DNA from: Auanema rhodensis
Lineage: Eukaryota; Animalia; Nematoda
Assembly: GCA_964057225.1 (NCBI GenBank)
Contig: OZ059894.1
Span: 14,322,001-14,386,000 of the forward strand
Direction of reading: 5' to 3'
Length of the DNA stretch: 64,000 nt
Both the position numbers and the translations under genes were made by a program. Below are positions 4,022 through 48,500 of this stretch, in pieces; position 1 is the first letter of the stretch; every line of letters begins with the position of its first letter. The notes beneath the pieces are model-generated. The model was not told the origin of the DNA and made no database searches. It saw only the letters and a list, made by a program, of their open reading frames with translations.

Positions 4022-6168
4022 GATTTTATCGTCTGAAATATGATAAATATAGAAATTATATATAAATAAATAATAATATAAATAAATATAATAATTAAGA
4101 TAACTATTTAAATAGTTAACGAGAGAAAAAAACATATAACTAGCTACATGAAGAAAGAGGACATCAATGACGTGCAGAGAAATGGATAAAGGAGGGTCAA
4201 ATACATTTATATGTATGAAAAAACAAAGCATTTAACAGATCAAACAACTTCTAAAGAACGCTGTACTTCTTGAAATAGATTTTATTGAAGAAAAACAATC
4301 AATAAAAATAGTTTTTTCTTGCATTCTCAGAATAAAATTCAGAAGAAAATGCGTCTCTGACTATCTATAAATGATCGAAAAAAATGGATGAGCAATTCGT
4401 GTATGTTTATAATATTATGCTTTTCAGAATTGTTTATGCATAGATGTCACATATGTCAAAAAAAAAACAAAAATATTGGAAATTTTTAAAAAAGAACAGT
4501 TTTCTTTTGTTTTTTTCCGTTTTCTTATGAAAAAAGGCTAGTGCAGTAACATCTTTATGAGCATATTTGACATGTTAACTAGTTTTCTTATAGATTTATG
4601 AAGCTTTTTGCAATAGAACTGATCATTATAAAAGGAAATACCGGTGCAAATCGAGAAACATATTCTTGAAAGAGCGGAGATATAGTGATCTGGTAAACCA
4701 TGAAAATAGAGAAATAGCCAAGACAAGGAGAAGAAGAAGAGACTTTCCTTCACGAATGCCACGAGAATTTAACTAAACAGCATGGTTTTTGGGGATTAAA
4801 TAAGCTTATCAAATAGAGGTAAAATTGTTGATTTAATGAATACAATAATACAAATACAAATGAATTAAATCAGTGAAAGGTCATTGCTCTCTGATAGTTC
4901 ATATGGCATGATGCCAATGAGGGGAAAAATCAGTAAGATTAGATGAAGTAAGCAAGAACAAAATCAAAAAAATCAACACAATAATTGAAGTTAATTCTTT
5001 GTTTACATTAATGAAAACGATTCTAATATAATAAATAGTATATAACTAATCAATTTATATTATATGAAAAGATAATATCTTAATATTGATTTGAAAAAAA
5101 AATTGAAGAAAAAAAACCATTTCTGAAATAGTCATTCAATTTTCAAATGATTTCAGAATTAAAAAAATTTTTTTTTCAATTTTTTAAAAACAAACTAACA
5201 TGTTATGATGATGATAATAATTATATAAGTTTGTTTATATATATATAGATTAAGCTTTAATTTCATTATAATGCTCTTAAAGTTGAAAAACATGCTCATA
5301 TGTTAGCAAGCAAAAAACTGAGGTCAATAGCACGATGATGAGGATGACATTAGGATAGAAATCAGTACAATAGTCAGAAGCAAAACTTTCACATATTAGC
5401 CAGATGTGTGATACAAGTGGGAAAAACTATAAAATAATAGAAAATAGTTTCTGAATGTCATTGTGTGGAAAAATCATAAAGTTTCAGGGTTGATGAACTG
5501 AAAAATCAATTCAAAAAAAAATGGAAAGAAGCAAAGAGAAAAACAAAATATAAAAAAATAATCTTCAAAAGAAGAAGAATAAGAAGAAGAAAAAGGAATA
5601 TTGTCTGGAAAAATGAAAGAAACAGATGAGATGATGTGTCAAAGAGCAGAATAACTTTACTATTATGCCATATTGAACTTTTAAACAAAAAAAAATAGTA
5701 GACAATAACAAAATAATAGAATGATCAGTAAAATTAGATGATAATTGTAGTTACATACGTACTATAACTACGAAGTATAGAAGTAAAATGGTAATAGAAT
5801 AGACAAAAGACGAAAAGACGTTAACTATGAGTGAATATAACATCTATATACTTGCCTAGTTTACCCAAATATTAACAGAAAATGACTTGGAAATGAGCAA
5901 AAAGTCATGAACATGATGAATCATTGTCATGTCTACTGTTATGCATGACGTCATTTGAAAATTTGAAGATGCGTTGACGAGACGAAAATGAAAACTGGTG
6001 TTCAAGCTTTTCGTTAACGAAGAAATATTGGTGAGAATTTGATGAACGAGATGAACAGGAACACGTGTAATGAGAGATATGAGTTCAAGATTTGATGTCA
6101 ACTTGAAAAGTTCAAAATGAGACTCGCAACTCATAAGAAATCTAAATATATAGTTAGATATAAGTAAA

Positions 6169-31693: not shown

Positions 31694-32939
31694 TTAGTAC
31701 AGCTTATTTATGATCGATAAAAATACTGTAAGAGAAATTATAACAATTCCAAATGACCCATTTGCACCTCCGGTCCTCTTATCTAAGTCTGTTTTATCGT
31801 ATATAATTCTGAAAAAAAATTATAATAAAATAAAAATAGTATATACATGTAAAGAGATAAGAAAAAAACTTACTCAGCATGATATATACTACAGCTTGAA
31901 GCATGAGGAGCCTTATGAATCACCGATGGCAGTAACCAACCGCCATAATTGGTCAGAGTGAACTGCGAGACAAGATCATCCCTGTAATACGAATAAAATA
32001 GTATAAAAACTAAGCAATATCAATAAAATAAAAAGGAATTAACGACTAACCAAAGAAGATAACCCTTTTTAGAAAATTCATCTGTATTTAACATGTGTTC
32101 AGTCCAACTATCTTTTGTTGCTATTATATCTGCACGGATATTTTGTTTCTATAATTATCATTATTATCAAATTGATAATTATTATATTTTATTTACATCT
32201 GCAAATCCTATCAGTTTTTCAATGAATCTCACATTAGCAAGGCCATTAGGATTATTCATAAAAGCGGTCTGAATATTCAGCATTTAAATAGAAAACTTTA
32301 AGTTTTCAAAGAAAATATTCTTACATCAATCCACATAAATGTCTTAGATAGTGATATACCAGACAGTGCTGATACGATTTCATTTATAATAACTTCTGGA
32401 TCTTTATTAGAAGTATCATTTCCAGTAAAACTTGGAAGAATCATAAGCTCCAATTTAACGGCATTTTTTGCTAAATATTAGAATCAGAATAAATATATCT
32501 ATCATGTTAAACATACACACATTAAACAGTGCTTGAATAGTCTTGATAGCTTCAGGTTCAACAGCATTATCATAGTAAACACTTAAATATTGAAACATAC
32601 ATACATCTGTACTTTTTAATGAAATAAAAAAGAAATGAAACATACTAGATAAACAACGATTCGTAATCTTTAGCTGTAAAGCAACCAATATAATTTACCA
32701 ATTGAGGATTGTACCAATAATACATTCCAATTCCATATCCTAACGATGCTTTCTGATAAAATATATTATTGTATATTATTAATTTATTTGTAATTTGTAC
32801 ATACTTTGTCAGTTACCGAGCTATGAAGTGTTGTTTCATTAACGAATAATTCCCGTTCTACTAATTTATTGCGAGAAATGAAGGAATACACAGAAGGTAA
32901 CAATGTTGCTAATGATAGAAACAGAATAGTAGATTTCAT
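31694..32939 (-). CDS. GH25 (protist-type) lysozyme-like protein with signal peptide and GPI-type hydrophobic tail, no mucin stalk (paralogue C, about 280 aa)
   Basis: Eight exons: MKSTILFLSLATLLPSVYS...YGIGMYYWYNPQLVNYIGCFTAKDYESLFIY...KLELMILPSF...TFMWIDTAF...ADIIATKDSWTEHM...YLLWDD...TNYGGWLLPSVIH...TGGANGSFGIVIISLTVFLSIINKLY*. The C...Y...F, W.D, I.....W, LW and YGGW..P motifs are those of nematode lys genes. Intron phases 0,2,1,0,0,2,2 are the same as in the 35.5 and 39.8 kb genes. Confidence 0.8.
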
Positions 32940-34511: not shown

Positions 34512-34788
34512 GGTTTAAATAATAGCACAACTTAGAAAACTTTGAATTTATCATTAATTTCATCAAAATATGATTTTAAATTGATTGGATTTCGTAATTT
34601 TTAGATTTCATTAATAAAAATCGATTTGTTATCATGAAATATTATACATCAGGCTGTGTTGTAATTATGCAAATTTCATAATTCACACGTTTAATGGCAA
34701 AAGAGAAAAACAGAAAGCGATAGCTTGAAACTGATATTCAAATTTTTATTGATCGAAAATAACAATTTTACGGTAAAGTAGAATCTTA

Positions 34789-34855
34789 TATTACAAATTA
34801 TTTGTAAAAAGATGAAGAAGTTTAAGTAATACTTCAAGAATAATACAAAATGTAC
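34789..34855 (+). repeat. 67-bp direct repeat, copy 1
   Basis: TATTACAAATTATTTGTAAAAAGATGAAGAAGTTTAAGTAATACTTCAAGAATAATACAAAATGTAC, identical to 37363-37429. Confidence 0.92.
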
Positions 34856-35146
34856 GATAAGTTTATTAGAATGAACATTCGTTCAAATATGAACATTAAA
34901 AAACAGTAATGATCTGTTTGATTCACTGAAATAGGGTCTTCTAATGAACTTGTGTTTGATATTTCTTGACAGGAGCTGACCATATAAGATTAGCAAACGG
35001 AGAAATTAATACATAAGTCGGGAAGTATGTACTTGCTCATCAAGGACAAGTTCAAATTGACTGCTTTTCTTTCTTTATATGGGAGGGGTTTCTACTAGAC
35101 AGAAATATGAGATAGAGATGTCATTTTCCTTTTGTTTCGTCACTAT

Positions 35147-35393
35147 CTTATCATATTTATTAGCGTATGAAAATAATGTTTTCGAAAAAGGGAGTTACCC
35201 GAGAGAGGCGTGGGTTTCTCTTAGTTCCATATCCTTTACGATCAACTTTATCTTTAAACAACGCCTTTAGATAATTTGTTTATCATTTCTTTATCAAATA
35301 CTAATGGTTAAGTTAGAAAGAATTCCAAAAATTTAATTAAAATTAAAAAAATATTAAATTACAGATTAAATAGATATGTGTTTATGTGATAAG
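35147..35393. promoter_or_regulatory. Cluster of TGATAA/TTATCA GATA sites upstream of lysozyme-like copy A
   Basis: CTTATCA 35147-35153, TTATCA 35280-35285 and 35291-35296, TGATAAG 35387-35393. TGATAA is the established nematode intestinal (ELT-2-type) motif; function here is inferred. Confidence 0.45.
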
Positions 35394-35546
35394 AAAAAAG
35401 TTGAGAAAACGTTTGGAATGCAGTTCAAATACAAAAATGAAAATGGGCGTATGAATCAAAATATAATGTTGAAATGATATTTGAAGATGTCATCTATCTA
35501 AGATTATAAAAGCAATTGCTTAGACCACATTCATATGATATGAACC

Positions 35547-37357
35547 ATGAAGCTTCTAATATTCTTTTCAATTATTTCTCTAAATCTAGTATTAGCAGAT
35601 GATAATGAGGTTTAAGTTTATATGAATTTCTTTTTTAATTTTATATATTTAGCATGGTAAAGCAATAACACAACTAGTTTATGATGATAAACTTATAAAT
35701 CAAATTGAATGTTTAAAAGAAGCTGGATATACTAAACTATTCGTATAGTAATCATTTCTTTTTCTTTTTTCCTTTAAACAAAATAATTTATTTTTAGTAT
35801 TTCTACAGGAAATCAAGTATATCCATATGTGAATACATTAAAAACTATTGAAGAAAGTATGTTTAAACAAGATTATCTAAGATTCAAAATTAAAATTTCA
35901 GATGGAATATCACTTGAACTCATAATATTACCAAATTATTCAATATCTCTAGATCCAGCTGATATACAAAATGTTACAAATGCAATGAAATTGAATAATA
36001 TTAAATCAAAAAATTTATGGATGGATGTTTGTTTATTTGTTTGTTTTTATTTGTTTTTATTTTTTGATTTTAAGACTTCATTAATGCGTTATGAAGATGC
36101 AGACACAGAAGAAAATAAAAAAGATTTTTCTCGTCAGTATCTTATGAGTGTCACAGATACTTTAGAGGTAAATATTAATTATTTCAAGTTTATTCATTAT
36201 TTTTTCATTTTAGCCCATTAATTACAATTTAAATATTTTTTCAAATGAAAATGATTGGAAAAAGAATGTTGGAGATGATTTTAATGAACCAGCTGTTACG
36301 AAAAAACAACTTTTATGGTTAAAATAACTCAAATTATCTTCAAATTATTTATTTTCTTTGAAGGGAAAAGGAAAAGACTTTCAGTACATTTACTCCTTAT
36401 GGTGGATGGACTAAGCCTTCTGTTACTTTCACTCAACACGCCGTTAAGATTTGTGATTTAACTTGTGACGAGTTAGTTCATTCATTTCCTAATTATACTG
36501 ATTATATAAAATATTCTTTTAGTACCTTATATAACATTGCTGATCTTCAAGCTCGACCTCATATTGAAGAAACAACTGATCCCACCGTTGCTTCTACTAC
36601 TACAGCCGAGCCCACAGTCGCTTCTACTACTACTGTTGAGCCCACCGTTGCTTCTACTACTACAGCCGAGCCCACCGTTGCTTCTACTACTACAGCAGAG
36701 CCCACCGTTGCTTCTACTACTACAGCCGAGCCCACTGTCGCTTCTACTACTACAGCCGAGCCCACCGTTGCTTCTACTACCACATCAGAGCCCACCGTTG
36801 CTTCTACTACCACATCAGAGCCCACCGTTGCTTCTACTACTACAGCCGAGCCCACCGTTGCTTCTACTACCACATCAGAGCCCACCGTTGCTTCTACTAC
36901 TACTGTTGAGCCCACTGTCACCTCTGGAGGTTCAACGAACGCCCCTCCAGTCACTTCTGGAGGTTCAACGAACGCCCCTCCAGTCACTTCTGGAGGTTCA
37001 ACGAACGCCCCTCCAGTCACTTCTGGAGGTTCAACGAACGCCCCTCCAGTCACTTCTGGAGGTTCAACGAACGCCCCTCCAGTCACCTCTGGAGGTTCAA
37101 CGAACGCCCCTCCAGTCACTTCTGGAGGTTCAACGAACGCCCCTCCAGTCACCTCTGGAGGTTCAACGAACGCCCCTCCAGTCACTTCTGGAGGTTCAAC
37201 GAACGCTCCTCCAGTCACTTCTGGAGGTTCAACGAACGTTCCTCCAAACTCCGACCGTCCATATAGTACTACATCTAGAATACCAATAACGACTTCATCA
37301 ACATCATCGATAAGATATTTGACAGCGTTATTTGTGATATTAATTATTTTAATGTAA
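35547..37357 (+). CDS. GH25 lysozyme-like protein with Thr/Ser/Pro-rich mucin stalk and GPI-type tail (copy A, 493 aa)
   Basis: Exons 35547-35609, 35653-35747, 35798-35856, 35902-36026, 36075-36167, 36214-36317, 36364-36471, 36523-37357, all GT-AG and in frame. MKLLIFFSIISLNLVLA signal peptide; IECLKEAGYTKLFVY; LELIILP; NLWMDTS; LNIFSNENDWKKNVG; LLW; FSTFTPYGGWTKPS; then (STTTAEPTVA)x11, (SGGSTNAPPVT)x10 and STSSIRYLTALFVILIILM*. Confidence 0.88.
36581..36916 (+). repeat. 30-bp coding tandem repeat, about 11 units (STTTAEPTVA type)
   Basis: Unit CCCACCGTTGCTTCTACTACTACAGCCGAG with variants TACTGTTGAG and CACATCAGAG. Confidence 0.95.
36917..37246 (+). repeat. 33-bp coding tandem repeat, 10 units (VTSGGSTNAPP), unique to copy A
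   Basis: Unit GTCACTTCTGGAGGTTCAACGAACGCCCCTCCA. Confidence 0.95.
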
Positions 37358-37362
37358 TCCTG

Positions 37363-37429
37363 TATTACAAATTATTTGTAAAAAGATGAAGAAGTTTAAG
37401 TAATACTTCAAGAATAATACAAAATGTAC
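37363..37429 (+). repeat. 67-bp direct repeat, copy 2
   Basis: Identical to 34789-34855; begins 5 nt after the stop codon of copy A. Confidence 0.92.
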
Positions 37430-37675
37430 AGAAATTTCTTATATACATATAGTCGAAATAAATTGTTATTTTCCAATATATTCTTAAATTTATTTTCTAG
37501 CAAACTTTCCGAACAATGTTTCTTCATTGAACTCAATTCTACTTCTTACTTATTTGGAAAAGTGTGCTTGATTATTAAAACAATAAATATTATTTAACAT
37601 ATAATAACATATTCACATAGTTAAGACCAGAATATTTGATATCGTGCAAATTGAAACAAACATAATTACTAATAA

Positions 37676-39819
37676 TTAAATTAAAATAATTAATATCACA
37701 AATAACGCTGTCAAATATCTAATCGATGATGTTGATGAAGTCGTTATTGGTATTCTAGATGTAGTACTATATGGACGGTCGGAGTTTGGAGGAGCTCTAG
37801 AAGTGAAGGGAGTAGTCTTCTTCTTTTTTTTATGCTTAGTAGAAGCGTCCGTGGGCTCTACAGAGGTAGTAGAAGCAACGGTGGGTTTTGCTGTGGTAGT
37901 AGAAGCGTCCGTGGGCTCTACAGAGGTAGTAGAAGCAACGGTGGGTTTTGCTGTGGTAGTAGAAGCGTCCGTGGGCTCTACAGAGGTAGTAGAAGCATCC
38001 GTGGGCTCTACAGAGGTAGTAGAAGCGTCTGTGGGCTCTACAGAGGTAGTAGAAGCGTCTGTGGGCTCTACAGAGGTAGTAGAAGCGTCCGTGGGCTCTA
38101 CAGAGGTAGTAGAAGCAACGGTGGGTTTTGCTGTGGTAGTAGAAGCGTCCGTGGGCTCTACAGAGGTAGTAGAAGCGTCCGTGGGCTCGGCTGTAGTAGT
38201 AGAAGCGTCCGTGGGCTCTACAGAGGTAGTAGAAGCGTCCGTGGGCTCTACAGAGGTAGTAGAAGCATCCGTGGGCTCTACAGAGGTAGTAGAAGCGTCC
38301 GTGGGTTCTGCTGTGGTAGTAGAAGCAACGGTGGGCTCAACAGTAGTAGTAGAAGCAACGGTGGGCTCAACAGTAGTAGTAGAAGCAACGGTGGGTTCTG
38401 CTGTGGTAGTAGAAGCGACTGTGGGCTCAACAGTAGTAGTAGAAGCAACGGTGGGCTCTGAAGTGGTAGTAGAAGCGACAGTGGGCTCGGCTGTGGTAGT
38501 AGAAGCAACGGTGGGCTCTGATGTGGTAGTAGAAGCAACGGTGGGCTCTGATGTGGTAGTAGAAGCAACGGTGGGCTCTGATGTGGTAGTAGAAGCAACG
38601 GTGGGCTCGGCTGTAGTAGTAGAAGCGACAGTGGGCTCGGCTGTAGTAGTAGAAGCAACGGTGGGCTCTGCTGTAGTAGTAGAAGCAACGGTGGGCTCGG
38701 CTGTAGTAGTAGAAGCAACGGTGGGCTCAACAGTAGTAGTAGAAGCGACTGTGGGCTCGGCTGTAGTAGTAGAAGCAACGGTGGGATCAGTTGTTTCTTC
38801 AATATGAGGTCGAGCTTGAAGATCAGCAATGTTATATAAGGTACTAAAAGAATATTTTATATAATCAGTATAATTAGGAAATGAATGAACTAACTCGTCA
38901 CAAGTTAAATCACAAATCTTAACGGCGTGTTGAGTGAAAGTAACAGAAGGCTTAGTCCATCCACCATAAGGAGTAAATGTACTGAAAGTCTTTTCCTTTT
39001 CCCTTCAAAGAAAATAAATAATTTGAAGATAATTTGAGTTATTTTAACCATAAAAGTTGTTTTTTCGTAACAGCTGGTTCATTAAAATCATCTCCAACAT
39101 TCTTTTTCCAATCATTTTCATTTGAAAAAATATTTAAATTGTAATTAATGGGCTAAAATGAAAAAATAATGAATAAACTTGAAATAATTAATATTTACCT
39201 CTAAAGTATCTGTGACACTCATAAGATACTGACGAGAAAAATCTTTTTTATTTTCTTCTGTGTCTGCATCTTCATAACGCATTAATGAAGTCTTAAAATC
39301 AAAAAATAAAAACAAATAAAAACAAACAAATAAACAAACATCCATCCATAAATTTTTTGATTTAATATTATTCAATTTCATTGCATTTGTAACATTTTGT
39401 ATATCAGCTGGATCTAGAGATATTGAATAATTTGGTAATATTATGAGTTCAAGTGATATTCCATCTGAAATTTTAATTTTGAATCTTAGATAATCTTGTT
39501 TAAACATACTTTCTTCAATAGTTTTTAATGTATTCACATATGGATATACTTGATTTCCTGTAGAAATACTAAAAATAAATTATTTTGTTTAAAGGAAAAA
39601 AGAAAAAGAAATGATTACTATACGAATAGTTTAGTATATCCAGCTTCTTTTAAACATTCAATTTGATTTATAAGTTTATCATCATAAACTAGTTGTGTTA
39701 TTGCTTTACCATGCTAAATATATAAAATTAAAAAAGAAATTCATATAAACTTAAACCTCATTATCATCTGCTAATACTAGATTTAGAGAAATAATTGAAA
39801 AGAATATTAGAAGCTTCAT
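37676..39819 (-). CDS. GH25 lysozyme-like protein with longer mucin stalk and GPI-type tail (copy B, 604 aa)
   Basis: Mirror image of copy A for exons 1-7 (ATG at 39819). The last exon, 38843-37676, encodes about 31 decapeptide repeats (STTTAEPTVA, then STTSVEPTDA/STTTAKPTVA variants) followed by STKHKKKKKTTPFTSRAPPNSDRPYSTTSRIPITTSSTSSIRYLTALFVILIILI*. Confidence 0.88.
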
Positions 39820-39977
39820 GGTTCATATCATATGAATGTGGTCTAAGCAATTGCTTTTATAATCTTAGATAGATGACATCTTCAAATATCATTTCAACAT
39901 TATATTTTGATTCATACGCCCATTTTCATTTTTGTATTTGAACTGCATTCCAAACGTTTTCTCAACTTTTTTCTTAT
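37679..39977 (-). repeat. Right arm of inverted segmental duplication
   Basis: Homology to the left arm ends sharply at 39977 (partner 35389): the reverse complement here reads TTC|ATAAGAAAA versus GTG|ATAAGAAAA in the left arm. Confidence 0.95.
37837..38785 (-). repeat. 30-bp coding tandem repeat, about 31 units, in copy B
   Basis: Plus-strand unit AGTAGAAGCGTCCGTGGGCTCTACAGAGGT and variants; the first 8 units from the 5' end of the gene match copy A. Confidence 0.95.
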
Positions 39978-42900
39978 GAATCCAGTTATCCTTTGAGGCT
40001 AGCCAAAACTAGAACAGCGCAGCTTTTAGGTTGAAGTGTTGATTAGAAAAGAAACAATCATGATATTTGAGGATATAATATATACGTGTGTGTATATATT
40101 ACGTTGAGAGTCCACAAAAAATTTTTGTTTAAAAGTATTAATTGTTAATTTAGTTGGAATGAACTAAGGACATAATGAATTAATGAGATTTTAACATTTT
40201 TGCTCATTTTGGACGCCCTTTCGTCTTTGGAACTGAAACCAACTGTTTAGCGAAATAGATTATGGAGCTAGAAATCCATTAAATTGCTTTTTCTGCTATG
40301 TAAAACTATAAAATAGAAGAAAGAATATCTTTCGCAAAATTTTATGATTTTCAAACAATTGATTTTATATTTGTTTCAATTTTGATATTTATACTGTATC
40401 AATATATGAATAATAATTCTCAATAAAAACTAAAATAAAGTTTTTTGTGTCTCTTTCTCTCTCTCTTTCTTTCTTTCTCTTTCTCTCTCTCTCTTTCTCT
40501 CTCTCTCTTTCTTTCTCTCTCTCTTTCTTTCTCTCTCTCTTTCTCTCTCACAAATTCTCTTGAAATGTTTCTTATACTTCTTCCATCTATGTATTAATTT
40601 TTTGTTGCAATTTTTAGGGTGAAGAGCTGATATAAGATTCACAGAAGTATGAAAGATGGCTTTGATATTCAGATTTTATTTTTGATTTTCATAAAATGTT
40701 TGTACAAACCATTAATTTAAATATTTTATGAAAATTTAGTTTCTTTTGCTGGTTTAATGCGTTTGAATACTTTCAAAATACTTACTTCAAACAACTATTT
40801 TACATGTAATTACTCCTCAGAATTAACTATTGTTAAAGTGATCAATTAAATAATTAGGTTGTAAACTTGAAAAACTAACGAAGTGATGATGAGTATGAGT
40901 ATGTTGATCAAACTATCTCAATATTCTCTCTGAATCTTCAGTCAATTAAAGAATCTTTTTCAACTATTTGTTTTGTATCGAATTATCTTTTATATTTCTG
41001 TTTTGCATGATGAGGTTTGCATTCAGTGTAATAGTATAGTGTGAGAAGCATTTTGAAGACAAAGAACAGCAGAAGTTGATGATGAAGAACACATTTGACT
41101 CATCTGATTGTTGCACCTAGTTATCGGTATAGGATAAAAGCAGAGAGCAAAGGCGGAATATACCCTTGAAAAAGTTTTGAGAGAGAGAGAGAGTGAGAGA
41201 GAGAGAGAGTATGAGAGAGGGATAGAGAAAGAAAAAGTAAATTGCAGGAGAACTAATCGAAAAGCTCATCGGAAGTCTTTCATATTGACTTCAAAACATT
41301 TCATCTCCATATCTCTCTGGACGAGAAACTGATCATTTTGAGATATTCTTTCATCGCTTGAGGTAATCATACCTCAACTCTATCAACTTCGTACTGCCAT
41401 ACTCAGATCTTTGATCTCTAATAATTTTCAAAGACATTTATATTCCTCGATTTCTGTTCTTGCAGCTTATTTTCTGCATAATAAGTGTATGCAACATATT
41501 TCTCCAGCACTTTATGAAGTTCAACTATTTTATATGTAAGAGAATAAGAACTTGGTAAAACTATATGATAGATTACTATAATCTACAATAAAATTGTTTA
41601 TTCTTTTACCATTTTATGTATTTTATACATAACTATATGATATTTGATAAACTTTATAGTTTAAAAATTAGAAATCAAAAGTAATTGTAAAATATTTTTA
41701 TTTATTTTATGTATCATTTATGCATGGAAATATTTAAAATATATAGCTATGTACATACACATATTTTACTATTTTTATAGATCAAAGAATTCAATCAGTT
41801 TTTATTATTTTACAATAGAAAATAAATAATAATATTAGGTGGTGATTCAATTGATTCATTGCCCAAAGTTTTTAATTTCCTCGACATTTTTGAAGTTTTC
41901 ATCCCTCAAATTGTATTTTCTTGACCTAAACAGATGAAAATCTGTTGAAGCAAGGCTTGGCGAGTAAGAGTATGTGGTTCAGGACGGTCCAGCCCAGTTC
42001 CAGAAACATCTAATAAAATTTTAAAAAAAAACGATTAGTTACGTATACTATATGAATAATGTAAATAGAATCAAACTATATATAAGTTTTATTAACTATA
42101 TAATATTATTTATTTAATTTATAATAAATAGATATGAATATAACAAAAACCATTTTTTTTCAACAAGGACAAGCTATTTTATAGAAATAGCTATTATTGT
42201 CAACATGTTGAGAAGAATAAGTTTGAAAACTTAAAAACAATAATCGAAAATCTTAAACTATGGTCTGTAAAATCGTTCTGATTCATTGGTCCAGATAATT
42301 TAAAGAAAAAAAAATAATTGAACTTTTCGGACAGGATTTGACTGTTTGCATACTTTATGTATATACACATGTATTTATGTATCAAACATCACAACTTAAA
42401 TATCCATAAATACATGGATATTATTATTATTTTCCATCTTATAACATCAAAATATAATATTTTCTGATTCTTTATATGATTTGACTCAAATATACTTCGG
42501 CTTCAATGCGTTTGGTGGATACTTCAGAGCATCGTTCATTGTTAGATCATCATCGTTTCACCTTTCTTTTGTTAAAAAAAATTTATTCCCCCCCCCTTCT
42601 CCTTCTGTTCTATTTTCTTTTTATAATGTTCTTTCCGAGAAAAGTTTTTCGAATTCTTAATAAATAGTCTCAGATATTCTATAGAAAATTTTAAATATTC
42701 TGAATTCATTTGTCATTTTTGGCTCACCTGAATGCCCTGATTTTGAGCTGGGATGATTACGTGAACGAATTCTCGTTGTCTTTCATATTGTCTTGAAGAC
42801 TACATCCTTTAACAACTAGATGACATTTGTGATTCCATACAATTTCATTTTCTTTTCTTTTTTTTTTGAATTTTCATTTTGCTATTTATAGACTTTTGTT

Positions 42901-43104
42901 GGAAAAAAAAGAGTTTTTGAAAAATGAAATACAATTTAAAAACAACAGACTGTTATAATTGAATGATGAATGTGTTAATGTTTAATTTCTTTTATTTTTC
43001 TTATTTTTATCATTATCAATAATATTATAGAAATTTATATTTATGCAGATAATTTCTTTCTTTTTTTTAAACTCCCCTTCTCTCTCTCTATTTCTATCTC
43101 TCTT

Positions 43105-43108
<4 letters not shown>

Positions 43109-43182
<74 letters not shown>
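43109..43182 (+). repeat. (TC)37 microsatellite
   Basis: Longest of many GA/TC tracts in the window (others near 6845, 19980, 25435, 26470, 27620, 40450, 41180, 45545). Confidence 0.9.
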
Positions 43183-43189
<7 letters not shown>

Positions 43190-45016
43190 AATTATTAAGA
43201 AAAAAAGAAGCAGAAGACGAGATAAAATCTCTCTCTCTCTCTCTATTAGTAATTTGTAGTTCTTTCTATCCCTTTATCATTCATACCTATTATTTTTGCT
43301 CTTTTCTTCTTGACCAACGGACATTTTAACAAGCGATAAATACAACATGTCCTTCCTACTTTACAACTAATTTGAAGCTTTTCTTCGTTTTCTTTTTATT
43401 TGTACATTTCTTCTCACCAAACGCGTGAAGTATTACGATTTGAAAGTTTTAGTGATGAAAAGCTTTAAATTATCTGAGTGTGAACATTTATATTTAAAGA
43501 AAAAACTTTGTGATGTACATAAGCAACAATAAAATACGAGAAAGACATCATTTTCTTTTTACTTTGATCATATATACATACATATCTTCTTTCGACCATC
43601 TGTTACTTTTATATATTTTATTTTTAAATTTGTTAAATCATTTCGTAAAGGATAGTTAACTCACATTTCTTTTTATTTCGTAAATGTAAATCGTTTAAGA
43701 CTTTTTGACAATAACAACTTGTGATTGTTAGCTTGATTGAGTCAGATGATAGTAGTCGAAATGGGATATGGTTCACTTAATGATTGTTTAGTGCACTTTT
43801 CATTCTATATCTTATACATGATAGACTACTAACTATTGTAGCTTAAAGAGCTTTGTTGAAGACAACTCATGATGGCATCAGGTGTTTCCACCAATAGTTT
43901 TATCCTTCGAGCAGGAGACTTACAGCCGGAAACAAGCTCAAGCTTTAGACAAATCTGTGAAAAAGATTTAGAAATTGCATATGTACGTCATCTGAATATA
44001 TGAAGTAAAATTTTCTTTTTTTTCTTGTTTCTCAACCGGAACGTTTTTCTTCAATTGGTACTAGCCAACGTGGCTTCCGAACATGTGACCGCGACTATTA
44101 AGCAGATTCTTACCTTTCAACTTTCAAAAACGTTCAATTCATATTTATTTTCCTTTGTTCAATAGATTTTCATTCAATTTCATTCAATTTCTAGTAACAA
44201 GTTAACATTTTTCATGCTTAAACTTTTATTTCTTTTATAAAAATTTATTTTGTCTTCAATCTTTTATCATTTAAATACTTCTTCAGAATTTATTACAATT
44301 TATTAGGATGTAGTAGCAATTCATAGAATGCTGTATGTTTTTCTTTATTCATTTTGGCCTCCATGCTTAAAAAGTGCAAAAAGTTTCAAGTTTATAGCTT
44401 CTAATGACTAAACTTTAAATTACAAATTCACTTTTTAACGGAATCTATTTTCTTTTTTTGAATTTTTAAACCAAAAATATGAACAGCAGCATTTCTGTAT
44501 AAGAACTGTCATCCAATTTTTTTCTTAGAAATCCTATCAGATTGTCATTGCATATATCAGAATATTTACAAAACAATATTAAAAAAATAATATAAAATGA
44601 CAGATTAGATACAACTCTATCTATCTATCTCGTCATGTTATCCAAAAATAAAAATTTCATTTATGGTATTCATATACATGTACATATACACAGACATACA
44701 TAATGTATAAATACATTGTACATGTGTATAGCAAGGATATATCAAGCTTTTGCCTAGTTGATACATAGAGAATTGAGTATGTATGTACATATCTATGTAT
44801 GTATGTATGTATGTATATGGTATGTTATATCATATCATATCATATTAGATACATATATACTATATATTATATAAAAAAAAATATTTTTATAACAAAAAAA
44901 AATTATATAAAATAATAAAAAAATTTATTCAAATTATTCAAATCAACCTTTTTTTTCGATTTTTTTTAAAATTAAAATTAGTTTATTAACAGTACATATT
45001 AATATATTTTATATTA

Positions 45017-45053
<37 letters not shown>

Positions 45054-45540
45054 ATTCTTCAATAGTATTATTTTTGAAGAAATAACGAAAAAACAATAGA
45101 TGAATATGCTATGTATGCTGTATGTGTCCTATTTGCCTATCATATTTCAAGTAGATTTTATTTTTTTTTTTTTTGTTGCAAAAATCTTTTTTTATTCAGA
45201 TTGTAATTAACAAATTTAAATATATTCTTGTACTGATATACAGGTGAAATGATGTATCAAAATGAAAATACAGTCTCTTTGTCGTATTTCATATTGCTGG
45301 ATCATTAAAAAACATTCAGCTGATTTTCTTCTCTTTTTTTTGTTTTGTTTTTCAACTTATGTGTATCTATTTCACATTTCATTTGCTCTTTTCTATTATA
45401 GATCGTACTCAATTTAAAAAAAAAAAAGATTAGGACAATGAGAGAATAAAAGAGATTATAACAGAATAAGAGATAGAGAGAGATAGAGAGAGAAACATGA
45501 AGAGATTTGAACATAAAAACAAAATTTGCCATTTGTAGGC

Positions 45541-45595
<55 letters not shown>

Positions 45596-48500
45596 TGTAT
45601 GTTATAGTAATAAGTAGCAGTGCATTTTGTCTCAAGACAAATACTAGGTTATCCTGAATGAATTGGTACAACTCATCATATATCTCAAGCATTATCGTCT
45701 ATCATCATTATCAAAATATTTCTTTCAACTGATACCTTTTCCTCAAAATATGATCTTTTTAGATAAAAAAGAAAAATTCAAACTCTTCATACTATTGTAG
45801 AAAAACAGAAGATTTTCATTTCTTTTCTTTGCTAAAAAAATCCAAATAATCCCATATAAGGAAACATAAAAAAATTCTCTGTATATCCTTCTTATATTTT
45901 GATTCTTATCCTGCTTTTCATCAATTTTCTCGTTTTTAAAACAAATTTGTTCTATCAAAATCTATTCAAAATGTGATAAACTTTTCTCTTTACAGCAAAT
46001 TTTCCTTCCCTCTTCATGCAATATGTTTTATGATTTTTATTGGATTTTCATCAAAAATCTTTGTGCATTTCATAGCTGATCCTTTCGATATTTCTTCTCG
46101 ATCTTTCTTTTTTTTCTATTTTGCCGTTTCCATCTTGTTTTACAAAGGTTGTTCGTAATAAATGACCAGTTGTTAAACTAAATCAATCTGTCGTTTTCAA
46201 TTCCCTTATTGAATATCCTCTAATCGGTGTTCCAAATTGAAGGAAAATTTCCATATTTTCAACTTTATTTCCTTCATTAATGTTATTAACAAGTTTTTTT
46301 TTATTATTTTGTCTTAATATCTCATTTCATTATTCTTTGTTTTAACTTGATTTGAGAGTTATGATGATTATAGACGAATTTTTAAATTCATCTTTCATCT
46401 CGTATGCAGTCTATGAGTCTCGTAAATGAAAGTAAAAATAACGTTTTCCTGGTTCAAAAATAGAAATTTGTTAATTGGACTAGAAATTATTTTGAATTTC
46501 TGTTATTATAAATGTATTTGACTTATATAACGACATCTTAGTATCTCATCTATTTGTTTATATTCTATTCTTCTCTCAAGGTGGCCCCCAAGAAAAGACA
46601 AAATATTCAGAAAATTTTTAAAATTTCGTTTCAGCCCAGTAAGGTAACAGATCAAAACCTTTTATTTCAGATTTTTTATATTTTCACAGTTGAAATTAAG
46701 CTCGATTATAAGCTCAATTAAACAGTTGGTCAGTGAGTAGTGGGTGAACATTTTCATCAAAGACCACGAAGCTCACCCAATTGCGTCACCCATTCAGAAC
46801 AACTGCTTTTAATATTCAATACAATAAAAGAAGCGACGTTTCTGTTCATTTTTTTTCTAAAATCATCTCTATTTTCATATACAATCACTATATCAAATAA
46901 TAATCTTTGATTCTCTCTATTCTCATATTGGACATATTACTTTATATCTCTCAAACTTTATTTCTCTCTCTCTCTTTCTCTCTCTCCCTTTCTCTCTTGT
47001 TTTCAAAATCTGTATTCTACTTCTCTCGTATCTTTCAACATCTTCAAAGCATTTCTCTCTGCTGGATAAAATTTAAAAATAGATTTCCTGCAGAATACCC
47101 CCTCCCCCAGCTGATAGGTTGTACAGGCTAACTCCAGAAGATATAGCAGACCACACAGATGTCCTTTTAATCTGTTCAACAAACTTTCAATTGTTATATC
47201 TAACTATATGTATATAACTATATATCTATATATATATATATATATCTATATATTTCTTATAAAGTATATATTTAACATATTTTATTTGATTAGTTTCTAT
47301 ACTTTTTTTCATAAAATTTGCAAACAATTCATTAACTATATAAATATCTTCTTCTATTACTCCTCCAACCACAAAGAATCAAAAAATCAGTTTTTCTCAC
47401 TAATTGCTGATGTTTTTCCCCTGAGTACAAACTTAATTTTTAGATGATATCATCAATAGTATGCATTACTTTCTCATAATTTATCAGCATCCTAAGTTTG
47501 CCCTTGTAATATCCTCAAACTCTTTACTATATCTTCTCCTCCCTCACCACATTTTATAATATACTATAAACTTAACAAACATATGCAGTCACAGTTATTT
47601 CATAAAATTTGAATCAAATAACAAACTCCAATATAATTTTTATACTTCTAACAGTTGATCTAATACTGAGTCTTTTTCTGCTATAACATAACTCAATACT
47701 TCGAATATTGGCAAAAGTAGTTTGAGTATCGTACGAGATGACGTTTGATGCGTTTAATGGCATATTTTTTGTTCTTTCAATCATTGTTAGAACAATGTTT
47801 GATCACAATTTCTTGGAGCTTATGCTATTGCACCTTTTCGGCATGCTTAACTCAATACTTCTAAAATTCCTTCCGTTTTTCTTTTTTTTTCTACTTCTTC
47901 TTTTTGTCACTTTCACTGAAATATATACATAAATTGTCATCTTACACGCATTTTTCTTCCTTTTTCTTTCTAAATAAACCTTTTTCTATCTCAATTTTAA
48001 TGTGAATGAATAAGCACTAAGGTAATAGCATGTGAATATGTTTGTGAGTGGGTGCTATACCACGATCTTTCCCTCTTACATTTCCTCAAACCAACATCAT
48101 TATCCTGGCATCGCCTGACCAAAAGAATCACCGATCTACTATGCATAGGCCTCATGTCACATTAGACCTTCATGTGCTTCTCGTCCTCAACTATCAACAA
48201 GTGCTCTAAGAACAGAGTTTGTCACCACCTTGACTAGATGCTGGCATCTGGTATAAGATGATGTTTTTCATTAGCTCATTCACTAACCCAATTATCAGTA
48301 ATATCAACACTGTTAATTGATCTATTAAATTATAATAAATTACTACGTAAAGCTCAAATCTTATATAGAAATAGTTCATACATATATTGGAGACAATTTC
48401 CATAAATTGCTTAATATAGCAACAAAAAGATGTAAAAAAGAAATGGTGAGTATGAGTCAACGAAATGGAAATGAATGTATAAAGATAGAGAGATAGGGAG

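What the first reader, a model, noticed from the sequence alone, without database searches (positions are those of the whole stretch)
35389..39977. Gene palindrome with apparently identical heads and introns but different stalks
Seen: about 1.45 kb (proximal promoter, 7 exons, 7 introns, first 8 repeats) is indel-free and looks identical in both arms. The distal stalks use different units, and the shared tail has substitutions (ATA/ATT, ATG/ATT). Inference: the arms are older than their identity implies and are homogenised by arm-to-arm gene conversion, with the tract ending inside the array near 36840/38526. Recombination between the arms would also invert the centre and swap stalks between the two promoters, a possible surface-variation switch.
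Basis: partly seen in the sequence, partly recalled or inferred. Interest (0 to 1): 0.75.

Follow-up and report, generated by a model that had tools for sequence, protein, structure and literature searches.

The report
Mirror-image pair of surface mucin genes
Two mirror-image copies of a roundworm gene for a probable surface-anchored, sugar-coated protein are letter-for-letter identical over their first 1.45 kb but carry different stalks, most likely because one copy recently overwrote the other, a process already known for roundworm gene duplicates.

Summary
Window 35389-36840 and the reverse complement of 38526-39977 are 1452 nt with no mismatch or indel. Outer flanks and the 316-nt centre are unrelated.

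The arms are two intact convergent genes. Each has a signal peptide, a ~230-aa head, a Thr/Ser/Pro 10-aa repeat stalk and a GPI-like hydrophobic end.

Divergence rises inward:
- about 5 differences in 108 nt after a one-unit indel
- private stalk units in each gene
- 2 substitutions in the 111-119-nt tail

A third family member lies 115 kb away. It is a headless mucin of about 1750 aa. It matches the left gene's promoter, exon 1, intron 1 and start of exon 2 at 99.4%, its linker at 90-93% and its tail at 77%.

One recent overwrite cannot be told from ongoing exchange. The "surface-variation switch" has no support here and cannot be tested without reads.

The head has weak paralogues in this genome. 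A GH25 lysozyme link could not be verified exon by exon.

The scan noted similar inverted gene duplicates elsewhere in this genome (s1-420664, s1-422426). This is a new example of a known kind, of moderate interest.

The parts
35389..36840 (+). Left arm: tract identical to the right arm (158 nt upstream, exons 1-5, start of the last exon, first 9 stalk units)
   Evidence: 1452 nt, 0 mismatches, 0 indels against the reverse complement of 38526-39977
38526..39977 (-). Right arm: identical tract, mirror image of the left arm
35547..37357 (+). Left gene L, coding region. Exons 35547-35609, 35653-35747, 35798-36026, 36075-36167, 36214-36317, 36364-37357. 525 codons plus stop. Optional in-frame intron 36472-36522.
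   Evidence: GT-AG introns of 43-50 nt, phases consistent, open frame to TAA at 37355-37357
37676..39819 (-). Right gene R, coding region. Head exons mirror those of L; last exon 39002-37676. 636 codons plus stop.
   Evidence: open frame of 442 aa in the last exon, TAA at 37678-37676
36572..36915 (+). L stalk part 1: 11.4 units of 30 nt (10-aa Thr/Ser/Pro-rich repeat)
36917..37246 (+). L stalk part 2: 10 units of 33 nt (11-aa unit), 97-99% alike, found only here in the genome. It looks like an expansion of a pre-tail segment that is single-copy in R.
37837..38794 (-). R stalk: 32 units of 30 nt. Units 1-9 match L (only the last base of unit 9 differs). Units 17-32 are an R-private Asp-containing type interspersed with Lys-containing units.
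37239..37357 (+). L tail: shared unique C-terminal segment ending in a hydrophobic GPI-like stretch
   Evidence: 2 substitutions against R over 111-119 nt
37676..37794 (-). R tail: counterpart of the L tail
37359..37674 (.). Unique centre holding both 3' untranslated regions. AATAAA for L at 37457; for R (minus strand) at 37494-37489.
   Evidence: no similarity between the two sides or to the flanks
35188..35388 (+). Distal upstream region of L. It is shared with the third gene T but absent from R, so 35389 is R's duplication breakpoint.
   Evidence: 2 substitutions, a 1-nt indel and a 110-nt indel against T
34782..34868 (+). U': direct copy (93-97%) of the first ~86 nt after L's stop codon (37356-37441). 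Unexplained relic.
31700..32939 (-). Neighbour gene N: a distant paralogue of the head with a signal peptide, a hydrophobic C-terminal end and no stalk

Best explanation
This is a real tail-to-tail (convergent) inverted pair of paralogous genes, L and R, in a nematode chromosome. Each encodes a secreted protein with three parts:
- a ~230-aa globular head
- a mucin-like Thr/Ser/Pro repeat stalk
- a GPI-type C-terminal anchor signal

The pair is older than its perfect 1452-nt identity suggests. The 5' module (proximal promoter, signal peptide, head with its introns, first nine stalk units) was recently homogenised by intrachromosomal gene conversion. The tract is bounded outward by R's original duplication breakpoint (35389/39977). 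Inward it ends inside the repeat array, where register shifts and unit divergence stop heteroduplex extension.

The stalks then evolve separately by minisatellite-type expansion and contraction. The same 5' module has also been exchanged with a third, headless family member 115 kb away.

Shown: the structure, the identity gradient and the mosaic third copy. Inferred: conversion as the mechanism, its direction, and the cell-surface location and glycosylation of the products.
For: 1. The arms are exactly identical and both outer boundaries are sharp.
2. Both genes are intact, with canonical short introns.
3. L versus R identity falls in steps from 5' to 3':
   - 0 differences in 1452 nt
   - about 5 in 108 nt after a one-unit indel
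   - private unit types in each stalk
   - pre-tail substitutions plus a 12-nt indel
   - 2 differences in the 111-119-nt tail (Fisher p = 0.006)
4. Third gene T (L003, minus strand) compared with L:
   - 3 substitutions in 516 nt from 35188 to 35703
   - an in-frame head deletion junction at 35703|36530
   - 5 differences in 72 nt of linker plus unit 1
   - a tail only 77% identical (Fisher p = 1e-16)
   A neutral promoter and intron cannot be about 40 times more conserved than the coding tail unless they were exchanged recently.
5. The family exists only at these three loci on one contig, and no haplotig copy exists.
6. Precedent: conversion between adjacent inverted paralogues, reaching into introns, with tracts of 12-2958 bp, is documented in Caenorhabditis (PMC3966223).
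Against: - The L/R case alone rests on two tail substitutions plus differences inside repeat arrays, which mutate by their own fast process.
- A single assembly cannot show shared polymorphism, direction or recurrence of conversion.
- No sister-species locus could be compared, because the tools hold no nematode genomes.
- Short-read polishing could in principle have homogenised near-identical arms.
- The signal peptide, GPI signal and O-glycosylation were read from the sequence, not predicted by a tool.
Confidence: 0.65

Rival explanations
1. This is a very young inverted duplication with no gene conversion. The whole gene, from 158 nt upstream to the stop codon, was copied in inverted orientation so recently that no substitution has hit the 1452 nt. 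All differences arose afterwards in the hypermutable arrays and by chance in the tail.
For: Young inverted duplicates are common in rhabditid nematodes (PMC3966223; scan note s1-420664). Repeat arrays change fast. Most L/R differences lie in or next to arrays.
Against: - Two substitutions fall in the 111-119-nt unique tail against none in 1452 nt (p = 0.006).
- The pre-tail has substitutions plus a 12-nt indel.
- Sixteen R units are of types (SVEPTD-, TAEPTD- and TAKPTV-type) that differ at 2-7 positions from any L or T unit; the SVEPTD-type units differ at 3 or more.
- L has a private 33-nt array.
- The third gene shows that this family does exchange its 5' module.
Confidence: 0.17
2. This is an assembly or polishing artefact. 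Two alleles or a fold-back read were assembled as an inverted pair, or polishing copied one arm's consensus onto the other.
For: No reads are available here, so this cannot be excluded directly. Perfect identity over 1.45 kb is what polishing collapse would give.
Against: - Alleles would share flanks, yet the outer flanks and the centre are unrelated and unique in the genome.
- A fold-back chimera would give a symmetric centre, yet each side has private arrays and its own 3' region.
- The locus lies 14.36 Mb inside a 24.7-Mb contig.
- The third copy keeps a single-base difference inside the same stretch, so near-identical copies were not all flattened.
Confidence: 0.1
3. This is a regulated inversion switch. 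Recombination between the arms flips the central 1685 nt to change which stalk is expressed from the fuller left promoter, giving surface variation.
For: The geometry allows it. Crossing-over within a chromatid between inverted arms inverts the spacer, as seen in about half of the species comparisons of primate X palindromes (PMC8327919). R keeps only 158 nt of the shared upstream region, whereas L and T share about 200 nt more. The two promoters may therefore differ in strength.
Against: Both genes have the TATA-like proximal promoter and intact frames, so both products stay encoded in either orientation. No recombinase or short recombination site was identified. An inversion in a worm germ line would be a heritable polymorphism, not a switch. 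Nothing in one assembly shows two orientations.
Confidence: 0.04

Closest known systems
C. elegans hsp-16 inverted-repeat modules and other adjacent inverted paralogues with interlocus gene conversion (reviewed in PMC3966223)
   Same: These are small gene-bearing inverted repeats in a rhabditid nematode with a short unique centre. Their arms are kept identical or nearly so, conversion reaches into introns, and reported tract lengths (12-2958 bp) cover the 1452 nt seen here.
   Different: Here the identity covers only the 5' two-thirds of each gene. The 3' parts (stalk arrays) have diverged into different repeat types. A third, distant and headless paralogue shares the same 5' module.
Mammalian sex-chromosome palindromes with arm-to-arm gene conversion (PMC8327919, PMC8600007)
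   Same: The arms are near-identical, rearrangements are concentrated around the centre of symmetry, and spacer inversion by recombination between arms is expected.
   Different: The scale differs (1.5-kb arms against 8-140 kb or more). The locus is autosome-like in context and unknown in expression. Age has not been shown by cross-species comparison.
Membrane-anchored mucin-like surface glycoproteins with variable-number tandem repeats
   Same: The layout is a signal peptide, a Thr/Ser/Pro-rich 10-11-aa tandem repeat stalk of very different lengths among paralogues (about 21, 32 and 165 units) and a C-terminal hydrophobic anchor signal.
   Different: Two members carry an N-terminal globular head related to a worm-specific gene family. 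Surface location and glycosylation are inferred only.
Nematode LYS-type (GH25) lysozymes
   Same: Exon by exon, the head aligns with tandem gene clusters on contig C5 of this genome. From my memory of C. elegans LYS proteins, the C5 genes look like GH25-type lysozymes. That is a lead, not a test.
   Different: No Pfam PF01183 signal was found in any exon or in the six-frame genome scan. No match was found in the PDB. Where the C5 genes have an Asp in their first conserved motif, the head has Thr. Membership is unproven.

Membership tests
Gene-bearing palindrome homogenised by arm-to-arm gene conversion | Inverted arms with near-100% identity around a unique spacer | tested here: met
   1452 nt at 100%; 316-nt unique centre.
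Gene-bearing palindrome homogenised by arm-to-arm gene conversion | The duplication is older than the arm identity implies (a divergence step inside the duplicated unit, or an orthologous palindrome in another species) | tested here: met
   Internal step: 0 differences in 1452 nt against 2 in the 111-119-nt tail, plus pre-tail and array differences. The third paralogue is a mosaic (99.4% against 77-93%). The cross-species test was not possible.
Gene-bearing palindrome homogenised by arm-to-arm gene conversion | Polymorphisms shared by both arms, or spacer inversion polymorphism, in a population | not testable with these tools
   No reads or population data are available.
GH25 (LYS-type) lysozyme | Significant match to Pfam PF01183 (Glyco_hydro_25) | tested here: not met
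   Exon-wise hmmscan found nothing for L/R, the neighbour N or the C5 paralogues. The six-frame scan of the genome gave 0 hits. This is a weak negative.
GH25 (LYS-type) lysozyme | Catalytic acidic residues (N-terminal Asp motif and the Asp-x-Glu motif) | tested here: inconclusive
   In alignment A4 the C5 genes have Ala-Ile-Asp where the head has Ala-Ile-Thr. Exon 3 ends Trp-Met-Asp and is followed by Thr. The assignment of these motifs to GH25 rests on memory.
GH25 (LYS-type) lysozyme | GH25 barrel fold | tested here: inconclusive
   The AlphaFold2 model of the only multi-exon open frame (123 aa) had mean pLDDT 51 and was unusable. The whole spliced head was not folded.
GPI-anchored mucin-like surface protein | N-terminal signal peptide and C-terminal hydrophobic anchor signal | tested here: inconclusive
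   Both were read directly from the translations. No signal-peptide or GPI predictor is available.
GPI-anchored mucin-like surface protein | Long Ser/Thr/Pro-rich tandem repeats | tested here: met
Programmed DNA-inversion switch | Dedicated recombinase and defined recombination sites, with both orientations present | not tested
   No recombinase search was made of this intron-rich region. Orientation needs reads.

The most novel reading that the evidence does not exclude
The family may be a modular surface system. One promoter, signal peptide and head cassette would be kept identical by directional conversion across genes with stalks of about 250, 360 and (headless) 1700 residues. Inversion between the arms would be a standing polymorphism that re-pairs the fuller left promoter with either stalk. 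In addition, read-through across the abutting 3' ends would give an RNA with a perfect 1.45-kb hairpin able to trigger RNA interference against all three genes.
Probability: 0.08. Interest if true: 0.6.

Novelty: new member of a known kind. Interest (0 to 1): 0.35.

Why it matters
This is a clean, small example of concerted evolution acting on only part of a gene. The promoter, signal peptide and head are kept identical, while the repeat stalks diverge freely. An independent third copy dates the process.

If the products are surface-coat proteins, stalk length and composition vary among otherwise identical heads. That would be relevant to how a worm's surface is built.

It does not open a new question. 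Conversion between inverted duplicates is well documented in rhabditid nematodes and in mammalian palindromes.

Tried and rejected
Searches for the head's identity that found nothing:
- Pfam on every exon of L/R, of the neighbour N and of the C5 paralogues.
- PHROGs.
- PF01183 over the whole genome: 0 hits.
- Word-based protein search with the head part of the last exon and with a C5 two-exon frame.
- HMMER against 1.84 billion representatives with the 123-aa exon 3 / intron 3 / exon 4 open frame. It gave only two spurious hits to long repetitive bacterial-type proteins.
- PDB sequence and profile searches.
- ESM Atlas: low recognition and no consistent family.
- AlphaFold2 on the 123-aa frame: pLDDT 51, so it was not used for a fold search.

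Other negatives:
- Rfam on the window: no hit.
- The bacterial promoter/terminator scan of the centre was uninformative.
- No hidden similarity between the centre, the outer flanks and the upstream region.

Rejected ideas:
- Allelic mis-assembly, because the flanks are unrelated.
- Fold-back chimera, because the centre is asymmetric.

Full report
**Context.** The window is AT-rich (about 28% G+C). It has almost no long open frames and no Rfam hit. It lies at 14.32-14.39 Mb of a 24.7-Mb contig in a 181-Mb, 112-contig assembly. Earlier notes of this scan describe the genome as a roundworm. Genes here are split by many introns of 43-50 nt.

- An ungapped comparison anchored at 35389/39977 gives 1452 consecutive matches. 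The first mismatch is at 36841/38525, and matching beyond the outer ends is at chance level.
- This is the only large inverted repeat in the 64-kb window.
- Searches of the whole assembly with head exons, the upstream region, the array and the tail find these sequences only here and at one further locus on the same contig.
- There is therefore no haplotig copy.

**Gene models.** On the plus strand an ATG at 35547 opens a typical signal peptide. Five GT-AG introns join six exons in consistent phase. They give 525 codons to a TAA at 37355-37357.
- A sixth intron of 51 nt (36472-36522) is possible and is in frame.
- The right-hand gene has the mirrored head exons and a longer last exon, 636 codons to a TAA at 37678-37676.
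- The protein plan is: signal peptide, head of about 230 residues, short linker, stalk of 10-residue Thr/Ser/Pro-rich units, a unique tail, and a terminal hydrophobic stretch of the GPI-signal type.
- Signal, anchor and glycosylation are my reading of the sequence. No predictor was available.

**The stalks.**
- L has 11 units of 30 nt followed by 10 nearly identical units of 33 nt. The 33-nt unit occurs nowhere else in the genome.
- The 33-nt unit corresponds to a pre-tail segment that is single-copy in R and 12 nt shorter there.
- R has 32 units of 30 nt. Units 1-8 match L exactly; unit 9 differs only in its last base, the first mismatch at 36841/38525.
- R then carries one extra unit. The next 3.6 units align with about five differences in 108 nt.
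- R units 17-32 are mostly an Asp-containing type (SVEPTD) that differs at three to seven positions from every unit of L and of the third gene; the interspersed TAEPTD and TAKPTV units differ at two or more.

**The tail and centre.**
- After the stalks, the two genes share 111-119 nt of tail with exactly two substitutions, one synonymous and one Met to Ile.
- Similarity stops one base after the stop codons.
- The 316 nt between are unique. They hold an AATAAA for each gene only about 30 nt apart, so the convergent 3' ends probably abut.

**A third family member.** A search with the left upstream region found a match 115 kb upstream on the minus strand. I fetched it as L003. It is gene T, at G000 C1 14,237,464-14,242,768.
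- T shares with L the stretch 35188-35703. That is about 200 nt of distal upstream sequence that R lacks, then the proximal promoter, exon 1, intron 1 and the first 17 codons of exon 2.
- Over this stretch there are three substitutions, a 1-nt indel and a 110-nt indel.
- T then jumps in frame to 36530, so the whole head is missing.
- It continues through a linker with 4 differences in 42 nt, about 165 stalk units and a tail only 77% identical to L and R. The frame is intact for 1732 codons.
- The contrast between 3/516 at the 5' end and 28/145 in linker plus tail is extreme (p = 1e-16).
- The 5' part is largely promoter and intron, so constraint cannot explain this. The 5' module of T was exchanged with L recently, up to the point where homology breaks.

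**Interpretation.** L and R show the same direction of gradient in weaker form:
- nothing in 1452 nt, about 390 nt of which is intron or upstream
- about 5% in the next units
- private stalk types
- 1.7% in the tail (p = 0.006)

The duplication is older than the arm identity suggests, and the 5' module has been homogenised by gene conversion. The tract is limited outward by R's duplication breakpoint and inward by the array. Whether this was one recent event or is ongoing cannot be decided from one assembly.

The process is well known. A review of Caenorhabditis paralogues reports conversion between adjacent inverted genes (for example the hsp-16 modules), extension into introns, and tracts of 12 to 2958 bp (PMC3966223). 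Primate X palindromes likewise show near-identical arms with instability concentrated at the centre of symmetry and frequent spacer inversion (PMC8327919).

**Artefact?**
- Allelic mis-assembly would leave homologous flanks. Here both outer flanks and the centre are unrelated and unique.
- A fold-back chimera would be symmetric. Here each side has private arrays and its own 3' region.
- Polishing collapse cannot be excluded without reads. However, T keeps a single-base difference inside the same stretch.

**The switch idea.** Crossing-over between the arms would flip 36841-38525 and re-pair stalks with outer flanks. Both genes keep the same head and proximal promoter, so both proteins remain encoded. 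The only asymmetry is that L (like T) has about 200 nt more shared upstream sequence than R. I found nothing that suggests regulated inversion, and I rate it as an expected by-product polymorphism at most.

**What the head is.**
- The head has no detectable relative outside this genome. This holds for the word search and for a full HMMER scan of 1.84 billion representatives.
- Within the genome, its last two head exons match tandem gene clusters on contig C5 (E = 3e-6 genome-wide).
- Exons 2 and 5 align collinearly with the same genes and with the stalk-less neighbour gene at 31.7-32.9 kb.
- From memory, the C5 genes resemble the GH25-type LYS lysozymes of C. elegans. Another note of this scan (s1-397675) reads the head as a non-catalytic GH25-like domain.
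- I could not confirm this. Pfam, PHROGs and PDB searches of single exons were negative. The only foldable open frame gave an unusable model.
That step is the obvious way to settle the point.

**Verdict.** The finding is real, and the conversion reading is supported and extended by a third, headless copy. The switch reading is unsupported. It is a new example of a known kind.

Noticed in passing
L003:1465-6769 (minus strand) = G000 C1 14,237,464-14,242,768: A headless giant mucin gene T. It has the same promoter, signal peptide and intron 1 as the left gene, then an in-frame loss of the whole head. About 165 ten-residue stalk units and a diverged GPI-like tail follow. Its open frame is 1732 codons.
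   Followed up: yes
window 34782-34868 and 37356-37441: A direct repeat (93-97%) of the first ~86 nt after the left gene's stop codon lies about 520 nt upstream of the left arm. Only these two copies exist in the genome. Its similarity starts at the stop codon, the same spot where L/R similarity ends. It may be a relic of an older tandem copy or a templated insertion; this is unexplained.
   Followed up: partly
window 31700-32939 (minus strand): The neighbour gene encodes a distant paralogue of the head (28% identity over exon 3/4, same exon boundary). It has its own signal peptide and a hydrophobic C-terminal end, but no repeat stalk.
   Followed up: partly
L001:3300-8200 and L002:2500-9800 (G000 C5 6.27-6.28 Mb and 6.915-6.925 Mb): Tandem clusters of at least seven genes share a conserved C-terminal exon (Phe-Gly-Gly-Trp ... 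Gln-Tyr/Phe-Ala-Lys ... Cys). They are the nearest relatives of the head, and from memory look like LYS-type lysozymes. Pfam does not detect them exon by exon.
   Followed up: partly
window 36027-36074 and 36472-36522 (and mirror positions): Intron 3 (48 nt) and the optional sixth intron (51 nt) are in frame and free of stop codons. Retaining either would keep the reading frame.
   Followed up: no
window 37457-37494: The polyadenylation signals of the two convergent genes lie about 30 nt apart on opposite strands, so the transcripts probably abut or overlap. Read-through would give an RNA with a 1452-nt perfect hairpin.
   Followed up: no
window 40450-40549, 41179-41232, 43021-43227, 45531-45600: Long (TC)n/(GA)n microsatellites lie in the apparently gene-poor stretch to the right of the palindrome. 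A similar tract lies near the third gene (L004 about 5207-5310).
   Followed up: no
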